DNA of 64,000 nucleotides from positions 1 to 64,000 of the IMG/VR virus record IMGVR_UViG_3300035181_000471; one strand, written 5' to 3'. The notes below the pieces were generated by a model. The model was not told where the DNA came from and searched no databases. It saw only the letters and a list, made by a program, of their open reading frames with translations. The position numbers were made by a program, and so were the translations under genes. This document shows, in pieces, positions 53,863 through 63,832 of the stretch. Each line of letters opens with the position of its first letter. Position 1 is the stretch's first letter.

Positions 53863-54474
53863 TTACAGAAGTTCGAAGTTTCTGTGGTACCAGAAACCGT
53901 CTTGGAAAGTGTTCATAATGGCAACAGCGGTAATCTTGTTGTCCATGTCTGGCTCTCTCCAAATTGTTTTGTATTCGCCAGGACCAGTCTTCCCAGAGAG
54001 ATCTTTGCTACTGGCGTAAGGACTAGTGTCCTTTTTAGGAGTCATTAGGATGAGAGTCCCATTGGTCCAAGGAGCGAGTGGATGCTCCTTTTGAAACTGT
54101 GCGGCGGCGTGACTAGCCTGGACAACCTTTTGTGAGGTCGAGAGACTTGGATCGACAACGATGTAAAGCTTTTTGGCTCCAGGGTTGTTGAGGTAGGTCT
54201 TGAAGTGTTGAATCCCGGCCTGCATTGGGGCTAGAAGGGCCTTGTATTCTCTTTGCTTGCCTTCGGTATAGGGTAGGGTCTCACAAGGGCCTTTAGCCTT
54301 GTGTCCCGCTAATCCGCGAATCAGAGCGCGATGCTCACTGAGAGCGATATGGAGCATTCTGATTTCGGTTCTAAGGCCACCTTGCTTCTTGTGCTTTTCG
54401 ATAAGCAGTCTGAGCAAGAGTCTAGCGTTGAAGTAAGCTTCTTTTTGTTCCTGAGTGTAAGTGACATAAGCCAT
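53863..54474 (-). CDS. Pth2-like peptidyl-tRNA hydrolase with N-terminal extension
   Basis: KLYIVV...LS..Q...Q.SHA and WREPD....TAVA; start trimmed to MAYV. Confidence 0.72.
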   Translation of the reverse strand: MAYVTYTQEQKEAYFNARLLLRLLIEKHKKQGGLRTEIRMLHIALSEHRALIRGLAGHKAKGPCETLPYTEGKQREYKALLAPMQAGIQHFKTYLNNPGAKKLYIVVDPSLSTSQKVVQASHAAAQFQKEHPLAPWTNGTLILMTPKKDTSPYASSKDLSGKTGPGEYKTIWREPDMDNKITAVAIMNTFQDGFWYHRNFELL

Positions 54475-54551
54475 GTTTTTCTCCTTTAGAATGGTTGGCT
54501 GGTTTGTTAGCGGCAACTTCTAAGGATGGCTTATGGTGAGCGTGATGGCAC

Positions 54552-54602: not shown

Positions 54603-54680
54603 TGGTGCCCTCGGAGGAATTCGAATCCCCGATCAAGGTTTTAGAGACCCCAGCTTTAGGCCAGACTAAGCTACGAGGGC
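54603..54680 (-). tRNA. amber suppressor tRNA (anticodon CTA)
   Basis: Perfect acceptor GCCCTCG/CGAGGGC, A73, loop CT CTA AA, TTCGAAT, CCA. Confidence 0.88.
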
Positions 54681-56142: not shown

Positions 56143-56964
56143 TTACTGGTGTATCTTGTGTCGCCTATCATTAAAGGAGAACTCAATATACTCTACTTTC
56201 TGGTTACCAGTGAATTTAGTCTTGAATTGTTCAATATATTTATTAGCTTTGCCCTTTTTGACATATGCTATTGTAGTATGAGGCGCATAGTCAGGGAATG
56301 AATTGGCGTTATCTGGGTAGACTTCATTGCAATAATCGAATAAATCCTGGAGTTCTGGACTCTTTTCAACCTTTATAATGAGAACATCGTATGGTGCATC
56401 AGCGGGAGTGAACTGGCTTAAACCTAACCACTCAACCGACTTGACTTCTAGGCTTGGGTTGAACTTGTCTGGTGTTTGGTCCTTAATTCCGTAGAGACAA
56501 GTAATGTGGGGGTAGTCCTCTTTTCCCTTGATCTCTCCATCGGTGTAGACATCCTCTGGATCAACACTTTCAACGAACTCTAGAATTTTCTTAGTGACCT
56601 CTGGAGCGTAAGTCAACTGCACTGTGCTGTAGTCGTAAGCGGCTTGCTTTGTAAGGAGTCTGGCGAAAAAGGTTAGGAACCCCTTTTTACCACCTTGGCC
56701 GTAAGCTCTATCGTGATCGCCTTGAACACTAAGAATGAACAAAACTCCTTCATCAACCTTACACACGGCTCTTATTCCTTGGGATACTCGGATGGAAAGG
56801 AAGCCTGGGTTAGACTTAATTGGTTCTAAGTGGGTTCCTGCCCCATCTCTTAGCTGTTGTTCAGTGGCCTCAGTGACTTTAATCCTCAGAGCATCAAGAA
56901 GACGCTTTATATTCGGATTCTTTTTTGCCTGTTTAGTAGCGTCTTTTCCAAGTTCCATTTGCAT
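56143..56964 (-). CDS. RelE/HigB-like domain fused to a 2H phosphoesterase (Acb1/T4 57B-like)
   Basis: N: HLEP....GFLSIRV..GIRAV.......H..Y; C: PHITCLYG and FPDY.PHTTIAY. Confidence 0.8.
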   Translation of the reverse strand: MQMELGKDATKQAKKNPNIKRLLDALRIKVTEATEQQLRDGAGTHLEPIKSNPGFLSIRVSQGIRAVCKVDEGVLFILSVQGDHDRAYGQGGKKGFLTFFARLLTKQAAYDYSTVQLTYAPEVTKKILEFVESVDPEDVYTDGEIKGKEDYPHITCLYGIKDQTPDKFNPSLEVKSVEWLGLSQFTPADAPYDVLIIKVEKSPELQDLFDYCNEVYPDNANSFPDYAPHTTIAYVKKGKANKYIEQFKTKFTGNQKVEYIEFSFNDRRHKIHQ

Positions 56965-57190: not shown

Positions 57191-57358
57191 TTATTTGTTC
57201 CTGTGGGTCTTTTTCTTTCTGACCCCATGCCTAGGTTTGCGGGAAGCATTTTCATTGCGATGCCACTTGCAGTAGGGGCAACTGGCTTCTAGTTCTTTAT
57301 GCCTTTTGGCCCAGACCGTAGAGTTTTCGGTAGTGTCTAGTTCATTTTTGGCTTTCAT
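57191..57358 (-). CDS. small basic Zn-finger-like protein, 55 aa
   Basis: AGGAG RBS; CPYC..H; K/R-rich tail. Confidence 0.6.
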   Translation of the reverse strand: MKAKNELDTTENSTVWAKRHKELEASCPYCKWHRNENASRKPRHGVRKKKTHRNK

Positions 57359-57374
57359 AAAGCTCCTGGAATAA

Positions 57375-57465
57375 TGGGTCCGTCCTAGGGGAGTCGAACC
57401 CCTTGTGCGTAAAATTACGCTGTGGTTTAAAAGACCACGGCCTGAACCGTGCGGCAAAGGACGGA
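57375..57465 (-). tRNA. atypical tRNA, anticodon TTT (Lys), long variable arm, 8-bp acceptor
   Basis: GTGGT-CT TTT AA-ACCAC; V arm GCGTAA/TTACGC; TCCGTCCT/AGGACGGA. Confidence 0.8.
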
Positions 57466-57486
57466 TAATGGTGCTATTTGTGTTTT

Positions 57487-57560
57487 TGGTAGCCACTTGC
57501 AGAATCGAACTGCAAACTCTTCCATGTCGAAGAAGCGGTATCCCACTTACCTAAGCGGCT
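57487..57560 (-). tRNA. tRNA-Val(GAC), C33
   Basis: Loop TC GAC AT. Confidence 0.8.
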
Positions 57561-57645
57561 ATTTTAATTCACTGGGTAGTTGCATTCACCCATCCGGTAG
57601 GGACACCTGTTTTCAAAATCCCGGCTTGTCAAGCTCCTTTAATAG

Positions 57646-57730
57646 TGGTGCGGATAGAGGGAGTCGAACCCCCATGCCGTTAGGCGCTGGCTTCTAAGAC
57701 CAGTTTGTCTACCAATTCCAACATACCCGC
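57646..57730 (-). tRNA. tRNA-Leu(TAG)
   Basis: Loop CT TAG AA, long V arm. Confidence 0.92.
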
Positions 57731-57736
57731 ATCGAA

Positions 57737-57811
57737 TGGAGCCTCTAAGGGGAATCGAACCCCTATCGTCTGATTACGAAACAGACATAATTGCCATTAT
57801 ACTACAGAGGC
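57737..57811 (-). tRNA. tRNA-Thr(CGT)
   Basis: Loop TT CGT AA; T31-T39 mismatch. Confidence 0.88.
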
Positions 57812-57841
57812 AAGAAGTAATTTAGTTGTCCAGTTAAATGT

Positions 57842-57917
57842 TGGTGTGACATGGGGGTTATGATCCCCCTCCGCGACTTTCACAGAGTCGTGTGCATCCG
57901 ATTACACCTATGTCACC
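57842..57917 (-). tRNA. tRNA-His(GTG) with non-canonical T loop
   Basis: Loop CT GTG AA; encoded G-1 opposite A73; T loop ATCATAA. Confidence 0.8.
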
Positions 57918-57959
57918 GTCTGGGGAATGAAGGACCACCTGTCCTAAATTCCGATTCTA

Positions 57960-58038
57960 TGGCGGTTCGTACGGGATTTGAACCCGTGATCTTTTGCGTG
58001 ACAGGCAAATGGGGACGGCCAGACTCCCCTAACGAACC
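57960..58038 (-). tRNA. tRNA-Asp(GTC)
   Basis: Loop CT GTC AC, G73. Confidence 0.9.
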
Positions 58039-58040
58039 AT

Positions 58041-58117
58041 TGGTACCCCCGGTAGGACTCAAACCTACATAATTCACCGTGTAAAGATGATGCCTAATCT
58101 CTCGGCGTCACAGGGGC
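58041..58117 (-). tRNA. tRNA-Val(TAC)
   Basis: Loop TT TAC AC. Confidence 0.85.
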
Positions 58118-58125
58118 ATTGATGT

Positions 58126-58201
58126 TGGAGCCGAATATCAGAATTGAACTGATCTCTCTGCGTTACAAGGGCAGAATAATTATCCACTATACTAATCCGG
58201 C
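58126..58201 (-). tRNA. tRNA-Thr(TGT)
   Basis: Loop CT TGT AA; C31-C39 mismatch. Confidence 0.85.
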
Positions 58202-58208
58202 ATGATAT

Positions 58209-58279
58209 TGGAAGGGCTGTAGGGAATCGAACCCTATCTGTTCGCTTCAAAGGCGAATCTGTCATCCTGTCTCAACCCT
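58209..58279 (-). tRNA. tRNA-Gln(TTG) with degenerate D arm
   Basis: TTCGC-CT TTG AA-GCGAA, good T arm, no clear D stem. Confidence 0.7.
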
Positions 58280-58280
58280 A

Positions 58281-58378
58281 TGGTTTCACACCTGAGCCGT
58301 CAAGCCCCAATCTCCCTAGCCCATCAAGCCGTATGGAAGACAATCGCTAGACTGATGAGATCCGTGCGATAGTGTGAA
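58281..58378 (-). ncRNA. CCA-ended tRNA-like RNA without an anticodon arm
   Basis: TTCACAC/GTGTGAA plus ACCA; nested helices ATCTC/GAGAT, CTAGC/GCTAG, CCAT/ATGG. Confidence 0.6.
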
Positions 58379-58460
58379 TGGCTCTCCATGTAGGAATCGA
58401 ACCTACTTAGCTTGCGCGACTGGTTAACAGCCAGTTACCGACCCGGACAGTATATGGAGA
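58379..58460 (-). tRNA. atypical tRNA-Asn(GTT) with extended variable arm
   Basis: ACTGG-CT GTT AA-CCAGT; V region with GC-GCAA-GC. Confidence 0.78.
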
Positions 58461-58525
58461 ATGAATTTCTTAGATAGTGGCCGTTGATCCACTTACGCTC
58501 TGTCGCTCAGTGCAGAGTATCTGTT

Positions 58526-58601
58526 TGGTGCCTCAGATGGGAGTCGAACCCACAACCAATAGAGTAAGAGTCTACTGCTCGACCAATTGAGCTTCTGAAG
58601 C
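58526..58601 (-). tRNA. tRNA-Lys(CTT)
   Basis: Loop CT CTT AC, conventional fold. Confidence 0.88.
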
Positions 58602-58671
58602 ATAAATACAGCACCCGGCACACTGGCTCTTTTACGCATACGCGACCTGTAGCCTGACGGTGTTGTGATTT

Positions 58672-58733
58672 TGGTGGATACAGTGGGTATTGAACCCACC
58701 TAGGGAGCTACCCTACTCGCCTTGAGTGTACCC
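58672..58733 (-). ncRNA. 62-nt mini-tRNA with Ala identity
   Basis: GGGTACA/TGTATCC (G3.U70), A73, CCA, T arm TTCAATA, 5-nt loop TAGCT. Confidence 0.7.
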
Positions 58734-58738
58734 ATGAT

Positions 58739-58825
58739 CGGTGATCCCAAGGGGAGTCGAACCCCTACAGTCGAGGACGCCTGGGTAAGAGCCAGGGGTG
58801 GTAGCCAGTTGCCACTATTGGGACC
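58739..58825 (-). tRNA. atypical tRNA, anticodon CTT (Lys), long V arm, foldable as 8/4, no encoded CCA
   Basis: CCTGG-CT CTT AC-CCAGG; V arm GTC/GAC; GGTCCCAA/TTGGGATC; ends ACCG. Confidence 0.75.
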
Positions 58826-58902
58826 GTAATTTGCGGCTCTAGGAACCCATCTTCCTAAATTTGATCCTGTCATGCAGGAACCGCCTATTTTTAAAGTTGC
58901 CA

Positions 58903-59259
58903 CTATTTCCAGAGTTTAAAGTTGGTAATTTCATCTTCCGCATTGGAAAGAGCATCCTCAAGGGAGGAGACTTCGGTTTCAAGATGAGAGATACGGCCTT
59001 CAAGAACTGAGAGAACTATTGCAAGACGCTCGGAAACCGTTCCATTCCAAATACCTGGAGTGTCGGGGAACATCCCACAGAGGGGGAGAATCAAGTCACT
59101 GCACTTGGTAAAGTCAGCGTAGACGGCATCTACTTCGTCCAGGGCGACCATTGCTTCCTTGGTGAAGAGTAGCATCTCGTTGGACTCAGGGTCAAAACGA
59201 GTGAGATCCTTGATGTTCTCATCAAGAGCTTCTCGGATCAGTGCAAGCTTTTCGGACAT
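58903..59259 (-). CDS. hypothetical protein
   Basis: Promoter copy plus GGAGG; start trimmed to MSEK. Confidence 0.65.
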   Translation of the reverse strand: MSEKLALIREALDENIKDLTRFDPESNEMLLFTKEAMVALDEVDAVYADFTKCSDLILPLCGMFPDTPGIWNGTVSERLAIVLSVLEGRISHLETEVSSLEDALSNAEDEITNFKLWK

Positions 59260-59583: not shown

Positions 59584-60282
59584 TCACTTCTTAATACTCA
59601 ACTTATCAAGCTCTCGATGAAGAGCTTTCAACTTTTTTGCGACTGCTGGAGCTTCCTCTTCCATAGTGTGTTCATGCCACTCTTGGCTAGGACTACTGTG
59701 TGAGTTAGTATTAAGATCCCACCACTTCTCAAGCTCGTCGATTTTAGCTTTAATTTTTTCGATCTTGTCTTTTCGAACCTCAGGGAATTCTTGGAAGGTG
59801 ATGGCGTAATCGTCCTTGTCACCCACATAGGTTCTTCCAAAGTTTACCCAGTTCTCAACATTTCTGAGTTCTTTGTAGTGTTGACCCCAGATGTAGTCTA
59901 CACCCAGCTTCTCAGGGATGGATCTTAGTTGTCTTCCTGCTCCGTAAGCACGGTATTCAGGTAGAACAAAGATTGCAACACCTTTGATACCAGTCTTGTT
60001 TTCCAAGCCGTGGACGCCTAGCTCAACTAAATCAGAGGCGGGTTTCTTCTCTTTCTTCAAGAAGTAGCCACCAATAATCTGTCCATCAGCAAGCGCAACA
60101 TAACAATTACTGAAGTTATTGCCCATTTCTTCTTTGATTTCAGTCTTTACATCCTCTTCTGATAGCCCTAAGGACTCTTTAAAGGACTTAAAACAGACAT
60201 TTAAAGCTTCAGCTACTTCGCTACGCTTCATCTTTCTGATCTGGATATCAAAGGCTGTCTTGGTGAGTAAGGTGGAAATCAT
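59584..60282 (-). CDS. GNAT-family acetyltransferase
   Basis: YVA..DGQIIG, IFVLPEYRAYGAGRQL motif A; start trimmed to MISTLL. Confidence 0.82.
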   Translation of the reverse strand: MISTLLTKTAFDIQIRKMKRSEVAEALNVCFKSFKESLGLSEEDVKTEIKEEMGNNFSNCYVALADGQIIGGYFLKKEKKPASDLVELGVHGLENKTGIKGVAIFVLPEYRAYGAGRQLRSIPEKLGVDYIWGQHYKELRNVENWVNFGRTYVGDKDDYAITFQEFPEVRKDKIEKIKAKIDELEKWWDLNTNSHSSPSQEWHEHTMEEEAPAVAKKLKALHRELDKLSIKK

Positions 60283-60396: not shown

Positions 60397-60405
60397 ACGA
60401 ATTTG

Positions 60406-60505
60406 ATCATCTGGATGGAGTCGAACCATCGGCCACCCGGAGTCCCCTGCAATTTGGTCCTTAACCGTGAGAGGTGGTGCGCTCTGACCGCTGAGCTACA
60501 AATGA
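60406..60505 (-). ncRNA. tRNA-like RNA with expanded anticodon domain
   Basis: Canonical acceptor, D and T arms; about 50 nt between D and T arms; no CCA. Confidence 0.65.
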
Positions 60506-60841: not shown

Positions 60842-60928
60842 TGGTCGGTGTGACAGGAATCGAACCTGCGTTTGTCCCTAATGGACCTAGCACCCCAAGC
60901 TAGTGGTCAACCATTGACCCACACACCG
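60842..60928 (-). tRNA. atypical tRNA-Pro(GGG) with long variable arm
   Basis: Loop TT GGG GT; V arm GTCC-ATTAG-GGAC. Confidence 0.85.
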
Positions 60929-61229: not shown

Positions 61230-61278
61230 AATTTGGAGGCGGTCCCTCCAGCAAAGAGGGCGCTTATCCGGCGTTGGC

Positions 61279-61354
61279 TGGTGGAGCCATCGGGAGTTCA
61301 ACCCGATCCACTAGACTGCGAAACTAGTATGCCACGCCTCAACACTTTGGCCCC
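61279..61354 (-). tRNA. tRNA-Ala(CGC)
   Basis: Loop TT CGC AG, G3.U70, T31-T39 mismatch. Confidence 0.8.
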
Positions 61355-61927: not shown

Positions 61928-61944
61928 ATGATATTTAGATGAAT

Positions 61945-62029
61945 TGGTGGAACATGATGGGAATCGAACCCATAACCTCTGCACGGCATTGCGCCCAAAC
62001 AGTGTGCTTACCAAAGCCACTTCAGCCCC
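61945..62029 (-). ncRNA. tRNA-like RNA with Ala-type acceptor and elongated anticodon arm
   Basis: GGGGCTG acceptor with bulge, G3.U70, ACCA, good T arm; no 7-nt anticodon loop. Confidence 0.65.
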
Positions 62030-63745: not shown

Positions 63746-63832
63746 TGGTACTCCTGACAGGATTCGAACCTGCGTTGGGCTTTCGCCGCACGGTTTCGTA
63801 GACCGTTACTAATCCATCTCAGTTACAGGAGC
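63746..63832 (-). tRNA. atypical tRNA-Arg(ACG) with long variable arm
   Basis: Loop CT ACG AA; V arm GGC-GAAA-GCC. Confidence 0.85.

What the first reader, a model, noticed from the sequence alone, without database searches (positions are those of the whole stretch)
58281..58378. 98-nt CCA-ended RNA with an acceptor stem but a non-tRNA core
Seen: exactly fills the gap between two tRNAs; 7-bp terminal stem plus ACCA; a long nested helix and a small GGGC-TTGACG-GCTC hairpin in the T-arm position. Known: the T4 tRNA cluster encodes stable non-tRNA species of unclear function. Inference: a processed tRNA mimic or decoy.
Basis: partly seen in the sequence, partly recalled or inferred. Interest (0 to 1): 0.6.

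Follow-up and report, generated by a model that had tools for sequence, protein, structure and literature searches.

The report
Conserved tRNA-derived RNA in phage tRNA array
A 98-base gene inside a huge phage's tRNA cluster encodes a conserved, cloverleaf-shaped RNA that descends from a tRNA but can no longer decode, a likely tRNA look-alike whose function is unknown and which no RNA family library lists.

Summary
On the minus strand, 58378→58281 is a 98-nt unit. It starts directly after the CCA of an odd tRNA-Asn(GUU) and ends in ACCA, 1 nt before a tRNA-Gln(UUG). It has a perfect 7-bp terminal stem and three hairpins. ARAGORN and Rfam do not recognise it, even at E≤10.

It is a real RNA gene. 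I found the same 98-nt unit in two other metagenomic phage lineages (L014, 97% identical; L026 group, 88%). Contig variants in other samples also carry it. All 35 proposed pairs stay paired, and six pairs changed on both sides (0 of 500 shuffles reach this). The acceptor stem and an 18-nt D-loop block never vary. The element is more conserved than the true tRNAs beside it, and similarity stops exactly at its ends.

The core is not fully "non-tRNA". The D arm keeps U8, A14, GG and A21, so this is a remodelled tRNA with an expanded D loop, a 7-bp "anticodon" stem with no anticodon loop, and no T loop.

The likely mechanism is inferred: excision by RNase P, then action as a non-decoding tRNA mimic. 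No RNA data exist. One lineage has AACA instead of ACCA. It resembles T4 species 1/2 RNAs only by analogy.

The parts
58281..58378 (-). Whole 98-nt tRNA-derived RNA gene (RNA position p = 58379 - coordinate)
   Evidence: Unit conserved end to end in L014:1282-1379 (124.9 bits) and L026:3924-4021 (94 to 113 bits). Contig variants in X5, X6, X3 and X4 align exactly over 58281-58378.
58372..58378 (-). Acceptor stem, 5' strand UUCACAC (p1-7)
   Evidence: Pairs with p88-94 as 7 Watson-Crick pairs, invariant in all three lineages. 0 of 14 stem positions vary, against 14 of 34 in the other stems; Fisher p = 0.004.
58366..58371 (-). U8, A9 and D-stem 5' strand UCGC (p8-13)
   Evidence: These are tRNA hallmark positions. 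Pairs 10-35 (U-A to C-G) and 12-33 (G-C to U.G) change on both sides in L026.
58348..58365 (-). Expanded 18-nt D loop ACGGAUCUCAUCAGUCUA (p14-31), with inner hairpin 16-19/27-30 and 7-nt loop CUCAUCA (p20-26)
   Evidence: 18 of 18 positions are invariant across the three lineages. The loop is fully complementary to p53-59.
58343..58347 (-). D-stem 3' strand GCGA plus U36 (p32-36)
   Evidence: Covaries with p10-13.
58310..58341 (-). Hairpin 2 in the anticodon-arm position (p38-69): 7-bp stem 38-44/63-69 and an 18-nt apical region holding UGAUGGG (p53-59)
   Evidence: Pairs 40-67, 42-65 and 43-64 change on both sides, and 41-66 on one side. All cells stay paired. There is no 7-nt anticodon loop.
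58294..58307 (-). Hairpin 3 in the T-arm position (p72-85): 5 bp with loop UGAC and no T-loop motif
   Evidence: Pair 74-83 changes G-C to A-U and 73-84 changes G.U to G-C in L026. The loop is invariant in the three lineages, with G78A in the X6 contig.
58281..58291 (-). Acceptor stem 3' strand GUGUGAA (p88-94) plus tail ACCA (p95-98)
   Evidence: The stem is invariant. The tail is ACCA in the window and L014, and AACA in the L026 group.
58379..58460 (-). Upstream partner: tRNA-Asn(GUU) with a long variable arm, whose CCA abuts the element
   Evidence: ARAGORN call; Rfam tRNA-Sec model 30.9 bits. An Asn(GUU) long-arm tRNA(-like) also precedes the element directly in L014 and L026, although its sequence is only 57 to 58% identical to the window's.
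58461..58525 (-). Spacer with a 53-nt block that accompanies the unit
   Evidence: 95% identical in pairwise comparisons between the window, L014 and L026, and the 53-nt block is also present in L010. Weak structure, z = -0.27. Role unknown; it may be a DNA-level signal.
58209..58279 (-). Downstream tRNA-Gln(UUG), 1 nt after the element
   Evidence: Rfam RF00005 34.9 bits; sequence.

Best explanation
The element is a gene for a conserved, structured, non-decoding RNA that evolved from a tRNA inside the tRNA array of a huge phage (the held record is 221 kb).

Shown:
- It folds as a cloverleaf with a 7-bp acceptor stem.
- The D arm has an 18-nt loop that carries its own small hairpin.
- A 7-bp helix with a large apical loop sits where the anticodon arm would be.
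- A 5-bp hairpin with a 4-nt loop sits where the T arm would be.
- The three inner stems are maintained by compensatory substitutions. The acceptor helix, the D-loop block, the junction bases and the segment UGAUGGG are fixed in sequence.

Inferred:
- It is transcribed with the tRNAs.
- RNase P cuts at its 5' end. Because there is no spacer, the same cut would create the CCA end of the upstream tRNA-Asn.
- The 3' end is trimmed to the tail, or repaired to CCA.
- The 12-bp stack of acceptor stem plus hairpin 3 mimics the tRNA minihelix.
- The D-loop hairpin may kiss the loop of hairpin 2 (7 complementary bases), in place of the lost D-loop/T-loop elbow.

Most likely role (inference, about 0.3 on its own): a tRNA-shaped ligand. 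A tRNA-binding protein of the host or the phage, such as a tRNA-directed defence nuclease, a modification enzyme or a synthetase, would recognise its invariant acceptor helix and D-loop extension. The RNA would then act as a mimic, decoy or sponge, not as an adaptor in translation.

The confidence of 0.55 is for the whole chain. On their own I put 'selected structured RNA gene' at about 0.9, 'derived from a tRNA' at about 0.8 and 'excised by RNase P' at about 0.6.
For: - Exact ends, 7-bp stem and ACCA. Chance of such a stem is 2.5e-5.
- Homologues: L014:1282-1379 and L026:3924-4021 plus four more samples of the same phage. That phage's neighbouring 2H-phosphoesterase is only 51% identical to the window's.
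- Covariation: 105 of 105 cells paired, 6 pairs changed on both sides, 0 of 500 shuffles reach this, slid controls give 0-1. RNAalifold recovers the same cloverleaf, as do the three separate MFE folds.
- G.U pairs fit only the minus-strand transcript.
- Window versus L026 identity is 88% for the element, against 75% (tRNA-Lys), 79% (tRNA-Gln) and 58% (tRNA-Asn) for the flanking tRNAs.
- In the X6 contigs the intergenic spacers are riddled with changes and indels, while the element has 2 changes.
- Variation is absent from the acceptor stem (0 of 14) and the D-loop block (0 of 18), against 14 of 34 in the other stems (p = 0.004; 2.4e-5 combined).
- CCA|UUCACAC with no spacer occurs in all four contexts: behind two different Asn tRNAs and behind tRNA-Lys. 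No other junction in the window's array has zero spacing.
- tRNA descent: U8, A14, GG and the A21 equivalent read directly from the sequence; the model's only weak global hits are tRNAs.
- Not a decoder: no RF00005 or ARAGORN hit.
- Loop-loop complementarity of 7 of 7 bases, kept in all sequences, with U.G becoming U-A in L014.
- Phage tRNAs acting as supplements or decoys against tRNA-cleaving defences are documented (PMC13096335; bioRxiv 10.1101/2023.03.15.532788).
Against: - No RNA-level evidence exists. No RNA run holds the sequence, and only contigs could be laid.
- Only three distinct full sequences are known, two of them close to each other, all from metagenomes with an unknown host.
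- The folding-energy z-score is weak (-1.31).
- In the L026 lineage the tail is AACA, not ACCA. An aminoacylatable or CCA-dependent end is therefore not strictly conserved.
- No CCA-adding enzyme gene was found in the held 221 kb.
- The loop-loop pairing has no covariation, because both sides are invariant. By chance it would be seen for 3 to 10% of random loops. It also competes with a local 4-bp apical helix that shows one-sided changes.
- A related phage (L010) has an ordinary tRNA-Asn at the same place and no element, so the element is dispensable.
- No binding partner is identified.
- No bacterial tRNA with the same acceptor stem was found for it to imitate.
Confidence: 0.55

Rival explanations
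1. It is a cis-acting processing or 'punctuation' module only. It would exist so that RNase P, cutting at its tRNA-like 5' end, releases the upstream irregular tRNA-Asn with a finished CCA end. It might also shield the transcript from exonucleases. The excised RNA itself would have no function.
For: - Zero-nt spacing to an upstream CCA in all four contexts, unique within the array.
- It almost always follows an Asn(GUU) long-arm tRNA.
- The acceptor stem plus hairpin 3 gives the 12-bp minihelix that RNase P accepts (established knowledge about RNase P minihelix substrates).
Against: - RNase P recognition does not need an invariant 7-bp sequence, an invariant 18-nt D-loop block or a conserved UGAUGGG. 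Yet these parts show 0 changes in 32 positions while the other stems covary.
- In L010 the same Asn long-arm tRNA is followed by a 6-nt spacer and an ordinary tRNA.
- In X3 and X4 the element follows tRNA-Lys instead.
Confidence: 0.2
2. It is a decaying tRNA pseudogene, or neutral filler that hitch-hikes in the array.
For: - tRNA detectors reject it.
- The T loop and anticodon loop are destroyed.
- Folding energy is unremarkable.
- The arrays contain several other irregular tRNA-like leftovers.
- CCA is mutated to ACA in L026.
Against: - It is better conserved than the neighbouring functional tRNAs.
- Six pairs are compensated and every pair is kept.
- Its length is exactly 98 nt in all lineages.
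- Substitutions avoid 32 specific positions.
- Spacers next to it diverge quickly.
Confidence: 0.05
3. It is an unusual but working adaptor tRNA. One version: a D-arm-less tRNA whose long first hairpin presents CUCAUCA as an anticodon loop (CAU), with hairpin 2 as a long variable arm. Another version: a tRNA whose insertions are removed by splicing.
For: - Hairpin 1 (5 bp, an internal loop, 4 bp, then a 7-nt loop with U in second place) is about as long as a stacked D stem plus anticodon stem.
- The loop differs from the Met/Ile2 loop CUCAUAA at one base (sequence reading).
- The arrays hold many irregular tRNAs (PMC5389517).
Against: - Position 37 would be C, whereas functional tRNAs carry a purine there (established knowledge).
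- That loop is fully complementary to p53-59, so it is probably occupied.
- There is no T loop for the elbow or the ribosome.
- No small-intron splicing system is known for bacterial or phage tRNAs, and the 'inserted' parts are the most conserved parts, not the least.
- The base in the other candidate anticodon position changes between lineages (C48U in L014).
Confidence: 0.07
4. It is a base-pairing regulatory RNA. Its 3' 14 nt (CAGGUGUGAAACCA) are exactly complementary to the mRNA of an HD-domain ORF 1.3 kb beyond the array (G000 65482-65495).
For: - A 14-nt exact match on the opposite sense of that ORF.
- The acceptor-stem sequence is invariant, as would be expected if the sequence itself matters.
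Against: - About 0.14 such 14-mers are expected by chance in this genome (and arithmetic).
- The 3' strand is locked in the acceptor helix.
- The site could not be examined in relatives, and L026 changes one base of the 14.
- No further match was found in the 20 kb of L026.
Confidence: 0.05
5. It is a self-cleaving ribozyme that cuts at its own 5' end and so frees the upstream tRNA.
For: - The element begins exactly at a junction that must be cut.
- A 2H-phosphoesterase-like ORF, which could remove a cyclic phosphate, lies in the array.
Against: - No match to any Rfam ribozyme family, even at E up to 10.
- The topology, with 5' and 3' ends paired in a cloverleaf, is not that of HDV-like, hatchet, twister, pistol or hammerhead motifs.
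- RNase P explains the cut more simply.
Confidence: 0.03

Closest known systems
Phage T4 small stable RNAs: species 1 (rnaC) and species 2 (rnaD)
   Same: Both are encoded inside a phage tRNA cluster, on the tRNA strand, packed against tRNA genes. Both are about 100-140 nt with a tRNA-like end, and their function is still unknown (T4 annotation; PMC3014915).
   Different: - There is no sequence or model similarity. R1 finds only tRNA-Arg in the T4 locus.
- rnaC keeps a canonical T arm (CCGGGUUCGAAUCCCGG) and is 139 nt. rnaD shows no cloverleaf.
- Neither has an encoded CCA in the annotated span.
- The element here has no T loop but has a tRNA-type D arm.
Canonical tRNA (Rfam RF00005)
   Same: 7-bp acceptor stem, discriminator A, encoded CCA, U8, a 4-bp D stem with A14, GG and A21, a four-way cloverleaf, and a 12-bp stack of acceptor stem plus third arm.
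   Different: - The D loop is 18 nt and carries its own hairpin.
- The 'anticodon' stem is 7 bp with an 18-nt apical region and no anticodon loop.
- The variable region is 2 nt.
- The third arm has a 4-nt loop without the T-loop motif.
- Two unpaired bases lie before the 3' acceptor strand.
- RF00005 and ARAGORN do not detect it.
Irregular tRNAs and allo-tRNAs in bacterial and phage tRNA polycistrons (Mukai et al. 2017, PMC5389517)
   Same: [quoted passage not shown] The same arrays here also hold long-variable-arm tRNAs with class-I anticodons.
   Different: allo-tRNAs keep a working anticodon arm, a T loop and a long variable arm, with an 8/4 or 9/3 acceptor branch. The element has none of these.
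tRNA-like small RNAs released by tRNA-processing enzymes (Bacillus cereus tRNA-Other; mascRNA; viral tRNA-like structures)
   Same: The concept is the same: a tRNA-shaped RNA that uses the tRNA-processing or tRNA-binding machinery without decoding. This comparison rests on my own knowledge; tRNA-Other is mentioned in PMC5389517.
   Different: There is no homology. Rfam mascRNA and Tymovirus TLS models do not hit the element. Those RNAs keep T-loop-like elbows, and none lies in a phage tRNA array.

Membership tests
tRNA (RF00005) | Detected by the covariance model at or above 29 bits, or by ARAGORN | tested here: not met
   No RF00005 hit on 58281-58378, even at E up to 10. ARAGORN finds none, with or without the intron option.
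tRNA (RF00005) | 7-bp acceptor stem, discriminator base and 3' CCA | tested here: met
   UUCACAC/GUGUGAA plus A plus CCA in the window and L014. The L026 lineage has AACA.
tRNA (RF00005) | D arm with U8, a 4-bp stem, A14, G18G19, A21 and a loop of 7-11 nt | tested here: inconclusive
   U8, A9, stem UCGC/GCGA, A14, GG and an A21 equivalent are present. The loop is 18 nt, and GG is predicted inside an inner helix.
tRNA (RF00005) | 5-bp anticodon stem with a 7-nt loop (U33, purine 37) | tested here: not met
   The stem is 7 bp and covaries, with an 18-nt apical region. The only 7-nt loop (CUCAUCA) sits in the D loop and has C at the position of base 37.
tRNA (RF00005) | T arm of 5 bp with a 7-nt GTTCRANNC-type loop | tested here: not met
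   Hairpin 3 is 5 bp with loop UGAC. All true tRNAs of the array carry GGUUCRAnUCC.
T4 species 1/2 RNAs (rnaC, rnaD) | Encoded within a phage tRNA cluster, on the same strand, abutting tRNA genes | tested here: met
T4 species 1/2 RNAs (rnaC, rnaD) | Sequence or structure similarity to rnaC or rnaD | tested here: not met
   Model R1 run over the T4 locus L021 with filters off hits only tRNA-Arg, at 8.5 bits. The folds differ.
T4 species 1/2 RNAs (rnaC, rnaD) | Accumulates as a stable processed RNA during infection | not testable with these tools
   No RNA run holds the sequence.
allo-tRNA (8/4 or 9/3) | 12-bp acceptor branch split 8/4 or 9/3, a long variable arm and a functional anticodon arm | tested here: not met
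   The branch is 7+5 (or 8+5 with a bulged A86). The variable region is 2 nt and there is no anticodon loop. Features are as defined in PMC5389517.
tmRNA | tRNA-Ala-like ends with G3.U70 and a tag reading frame | tested here: not met
   ARAGORN's tmRNA mode and the Rfam tmRNA models give nothing on the element. Pair 3-70 is C-G.
Known self-cleaving ribozymes (Rfam: hammerhead, HDV-like, twister, pistol, hatchet, hairpin) | Match to a family model | tested here: not met
   No such hit at E up to 10 in 57300-59000.

The most novel reading that the evidence does not exclude
The element is a purpose-built tRNA mimic. Its invariant acceptor helix and kissing-loop core would be read by one specific tRNA-binding protein. 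One possibility is that it traps or blocks a host tRNA-directed defence enzyme, such as an acceptor-end or anticodon-loop nuclease or a nucleotidyltransferase. Another is that it is charged and used outside the ribosome. It would form a functional unit with the odd long-arm tRNA-Asn that it always touches. That would make it the first phage tRNA-array 'non-tRNA' with a defined job, half a century after the T4 species 1/2 RNAs were found.
Probability: 0.25. Interest if true: 0.8.

Novelty: new variant of a known kind. Interest (0 to 1): 0.6.

Why it matters
Phage tRNA clusters have been known since T4 to encode stable non-tRNA RNAs, and their roles are still unknown. Recent work shows that phage tRNAs can counter tRNA-cleaving defences.

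This case is unusually clean:
- It is a 98-nt unit with exact ends.
- Its cloverleaf is supported by covariation.
- Its tRNA ancestry is clear.
- The pattern of constraint points to sequence-specific recognition of the acceptor helix and a D-loop extension, not just to folding. These parts are invariant while the other stems covary.

The element is small enough to synthesise and test directly for RNase P cleavage, charging, pull-downs and rescue from tRNA-targeting defence systems. It also flags this phage group's arrays as a rich source of irregular tRNA-like RNAs. It could be added to RNA family libraries, which currently miss it.

Tried and rejected
**Searches that found no relative**
- The phage collection by megablast and blastn found nothing.
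- Exact or degenerate DNA patterns from the element and from the conserved spacer found nothing in viral contigs.
- Protein-anchored scans of viral contigs and metagenome contigs found nothing.
- The one metagenome DNA pattern returned only chance hits in unrelated coding DNA (L015-L020). In hindsight it included stem positions that vary in L026, so it could not have found L026-type copies.
- The invariant 20-mer found nothing in genome contigs.

**Relatives without the element**
- Terminase relatives G001-G003 carry only 6 tRNAs and no copy.
- L007, L010 and L022-L025 have none. L032-L034 have none; L035-L038 were not searched with the model.

**Ideas tested and dropped**
- Host-tRNA mimicry of the acceptor stem. 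A pattern for tRNAs with UUCACAC/GUGUGAA in 185,579 species genomes gave 4 chance hits and no tRNA.
- A paralogue elsewhere in the 221-kb genome: none.
- Genome-wide TAG recoding as an explanation for the CUA tRNA. The standard code already gives dense coding.
- A phage CCA-adding enzyme: none found.
- Homology between the element and the 153-nt tRNA-like RNA that occupies the same place in L007. They share a short ACGGAUC...GUCUAG similarity, but the model finds nothing and the L007 fold does not use that hairpin.

**Steps that could not be completed**
- Several contigs of further relatives could not be fetched (P0004, P0007, P0011, P0015).
- The diverged copy seen in X3 and X4 (6 changes and 2 gaps) could not be retrieved as sequence.

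Full report
**Setting**

The window is the first 64 kb of a 221-kb IMG/VR virus record, estimated 77% complete. It encodes a terminase, a portal protein, a UvsX-like recombinase and a helicase. From 53.6 kb to the window's end, the minus strand carries a dense tRNA array. ARAGORN genes and Rfam adds six more. A few ORFs are interspersed: a 2H-phosphoesterase/Acb1-like protein, a GNAT, an HNH endonuclease and a 122-aa protein with no family match.

**The observation**

Read on the minus strand, the element runs 58378→58281.
- It starts immediately after the ...GCCA of a tRNA-Asn(GUU) that has a long variable arm (58379-58460).
- It ends ...GUGUGAA-ACCA. One U then precedes a tRNA-Gln(UUG) at 58209-58279.
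- Positions 1-7 and 88-94 form seven Watson-Crick pairs.
- The MFE structure is a cloverleaf with three hairpins: 9-36, 38-69 and 72-85.
- A stem like this at exactly these ends appears in 2.5e-5 of shuffles.
- The folding energy is ordinary (z = -1.31).
- Neither ARAGORN, including its intron and tmRNA modes, nor any of 4227 Rfam models at E≤10 touches it.

**Relatives**

Direct DNA searches failed. No RNA-seq run holds the region. Laying contigs from other metagenomes gave the first comparative evidence.
- The element appears as a block aligned exactly over 58281-58378 in a wastewater run (X5, 3 changes) and an aquatic run (X6, 2 changes).
- A more diverged copy (6 changes, 2 gaps) in X3 and X4 follows tRNA-Lys(CUU) directly.
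- In all of these the DNA on both sides is inserted, deleted or replaced.
- In X6 the intergenic spacers of the array are full of substitutions and indels, while the element is almost untouched.

I then went through flanking proteins.
- Homologues of the 122-aa ORF led to L014, which is the X5 contig and holds the element at 1282-1379.
- The same route led to L010 and L007, which lack the element.
- Homologues of the 2H-phosphoesterase led to L026 and four further samples of the same phage. That protein is only 51% identical to the window's.
- A covariance model built from the window and L014 finds a 98-nt homologue in each of the five loci where it hits (L026, L027, L029, L030, L031) at 94 bits, E = 5.5e-25.

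**Structure**

The three sequences align without gaps.
- On the cloverleaf plus a loop-loop helix, all 105 pair cells are standard pairs.
- Six pairs change on both sides: 10-35 U-A→C-G; 12-33 G-C→U·G; 40-67 C-G→U-A; 42-65; 43-64 C-G→U-A; 74-83 G-C→A-U.
- No shuffle of 500 reaches this. Sliding the partners by 1-3 columns gives 0-1 such pairs.
- RNAalifold returns the same cloverleaf, as does each separate MFE fold.
- The G·U pairs fix the transcript to the minus strand.
- Between the window and L026 the element is 88% identical. The flanking tRNA-Lys, tRNA-Gln and tRNA-Asn are 75%, 79% and 58% identical.

The element is therefore a selected RNA gene, not filler.

**What kind of RNA**

The 23 variable columns lie in the D stem, the stem and apex of hairpin 2, the stem of hairpin 3 and one tail base.
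- None lies in the acceptor stem (0 of 14), the 18-nt D-loop block (0 of 18), the junction bases or the UGAC loop.
- Comparing the acceptor stem with the other stems gives p = 0.004. Adding the D-loop block gives 2.4e-5.

The D arm reads U8-A9-[UCGC]-A14-C-GG...A-[GCGA]. That is a tRNA D arm with about 11 extra bases in the loop. The model's only weak global hits elsewhere are tRNAs, aligned arm for arm. I conclude that this is a remodelled tRNA.

By contrast, several tRNA features are missing.
- The second arm has a 7-bp stem and no anticodon loop.
- The variable region is 2 nt.
- The third arm has a 4-nt loop instead of the GGUUCRAnUCC seen in every true tRNA of the array.

It cannot decode.

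The stack of acceptor stem plus hairpin 3 is 12 bp, the length of the tRNA minihelix.

The 7-nt loop CUCAUCA (p20-26) is fully complementary to UGAUGGG (p53-59) in all sequences, and U·G becomes U-A in L014 and X6. This suggests a kissing interaction that could replace the lost D-loop/T-loop elbow. The case is weak: both sides are invariant, random loops reach this in 3-10% of trials, and a local 4-bp helix competes.

**Context**

In the window, L014 and L026 the order is tRNA-Lys, then a spacer, then an Asn(GUU) long-arm tRNA(-like), then the element.
- The spacer holds a 53-nt block. The whole spacer is 95% identical in each pairwise comparison.
- CCA|UUCACAC has no spacer. The copy in X3 and X4 abuts the CCA of tRNA-Lys in the same way.
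- No other junction of the window's array has zero spacing.
- L010 has the same spacer and Asn tRNA, but an ordinary tRNA-Asn in place of the element.
- L007 has a different 153-nt tRNA-like RNA there, with a canonical T arm.
- The tail is ACCA in the window and L014 but AACA in the L026 group. One true (irregular) tRNA in the window also has an imperfect CCA, so this is not decisive.
- I found no CCA-adding enzyme gene in the held genome.

**Mechanism**

Shown: the element is a conserved cloverleaf RNA gene of tRNA origin with exact ends. Its acceptor helix and D-loop extension are constrained in sequence.

Inferred from established knowledge of tRNA processing:
- It is co-transcribed with the array.
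- RNase P cleaves at its 5' end and thereby finishes the upstream tRNA's CCA end.
- The 3' end is trimmed.

Inferred more weakly: the mature RNA acts as a tRNA-shaped ligand (mimic or decoy) for a protein that reads the invariant parts. Phage tRNAs that supplement or decoy against tRNA-cleaving defences give precedent (PMC13096335; bioRxiv 10.1101/2023.03.15.532788).

Rivals are a pure processing module, a pseudogene, an odd decoding tRNA, a base-pairing RNA and a ribozyme. The base-pairing idea rests on a 14-nt complement in an HD-domain ORF, for which about 0.14 matches are expected by chance. All five are weighed in the Rival explanations section. None explains the pattern of constraint as well.

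**Comparison with known systems**

T4's rnaC and rnaD occupy the same kind of place, and their roles are unknown. They share no sequence or fold with the element. Irregular tRNAs and allo-tRNAs in phage clusters are known (PMC5389517), but they keep anticodon and T arms. The element fails the defining tests for tRNA, allo-tRNA, tmRNA and the known ribozymes. I file it as a new variant of the known kind "tRNA-like stable RNA encoded in a phage tRNA cluster".

**Limits**

- There are three distinct full sequences, two of them close to each other, all metagenomic.
- The host is unknown.
- No expression data exist.
- My one metagenome DNA pattern was badly chosen, so the family is probably larger than seen here.

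Noticed in passing
window 58461-58525 (-); L014:1131-1193; L010:4823-4885; L026:3773-3835: The spacer between tRNA-Lys and the Asn long-arm tRNA holds a 53-nt block (CAGAUACUCUGCACUGAGCGACAGAGCGUAAGUGGAUCAACGGCCACUAUCUAAGA). The spacer is 95% identical in pairwise comparisons between the window, L014 and L026, and the block is also present in L010. It is better conserved than any flanking tRNA. Its predicted structure is weak (z = -0.27), so it may be a DNA-level signal such as a phage promoter.
   Followed up: partly
window 58379-58460, 58740-58825, 57375-57465, 60842-60928, 63746-63832 (all -); L010:5065-5155: tRNAs with class-I anticodons (Asn GUU, Lys CUU, Lys UUU, Pro GGG, Arg ACG, Gln UUG) carry long variable arms. 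The Lys(UUU) one has an 8-bp acceptor stem and scores 43 bits on the tRNA-Sec model. Normal copies of some of these tRNAs are also present. This is reminiscent of allo-tRNAs, or of variable-arm changes that evade tRNA-cleaving defences.
   Followed up: no
window 58668-58733 (-): A 62-nt tRNA-like RNA plus ACCA, with a 7-bp acceptor stem and a good T arm but only two tiny hairpins in place of the D and anticodon arms (fold z = -3.3). No tool calls it.
   Followed up: partly
window 61940-62029 (-) and L007:2078-2160: A conserved irregular tRNA-like RNA with tmRNA-style ends (GGGGCUGA...UCCACCA, G3.U70) and a canonical T arm. ARAGORN and Rfam do not call it in the window.
   Followed up: no
window 61278-61354 (-) and 60403-60505 (-): Two more irregular tRNA-likes. 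The first has a T arm and CACCA but an odd core. The second is a tRNA with an insert of about 30 nt in the anticodon region and no encoded CCA (Rfam 40.7 bits).
   Followed up: no
L007:2281-2433: In a related phage, the place right after the Asn long-arm tRNA is taken by a different 153-nt CCA-ended RNA. It has a 7-bp acceptor stem, a canonical T arm and large inserts (z = -2.9). It has no Rfam hit and resembles T4 rnaC in style.
   Followed up: partly
L014:770-1050, L010:4440-4740 (absent from the window between 58602 and 58739): A conserved non-coding block of about 280 nt, closed by a long stem, lies between two Lys tRNAs in relatives. The only hint is a weak manA RNA match (17.7 bits, far below threshold).
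   Followed up: no
window 54603-54680 (-): A CUA (amber suppressor type) tRNA is present. TAG nevertheless ends 32 of 166 long ORFs, and the standard code already gives dense coding, so there is no sign of genome-wide TAG recoding.
   Followed up: partly
G000 65482-65495 (outside the window), inside ORF 64974-65624 (-): The mRNA of an HD-domain ORF contains an exact 14-nt complement of the element's 3' end (p85-98). About 0.14 such matches are expected by chance. Its conservation in relatives could not be checked.
   Followed up: partly
window 56143-56964 (-), 53863-54516 (-), 59584-60282 (-): Protein genes embedded in the array include a 2H-phosphoesterase/Acb1-like protein (sub-threshold Pfam hits; homologues in many related phages) and a GNAT-like protein. 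A 217-aa ORF has a C-terminal part that looks PTH2-like by eye, although Pfam gave no hit.
   Followed up: partly
L014:1380-1501: The 122 nt inserted after the element in L014 fold by eye into yet another tRNA-like unit. It has an 8-bp closing stem (GCACGAGG/CCUCGUGC), a degenerate T-like arm and no CCA.
   Followed up: no
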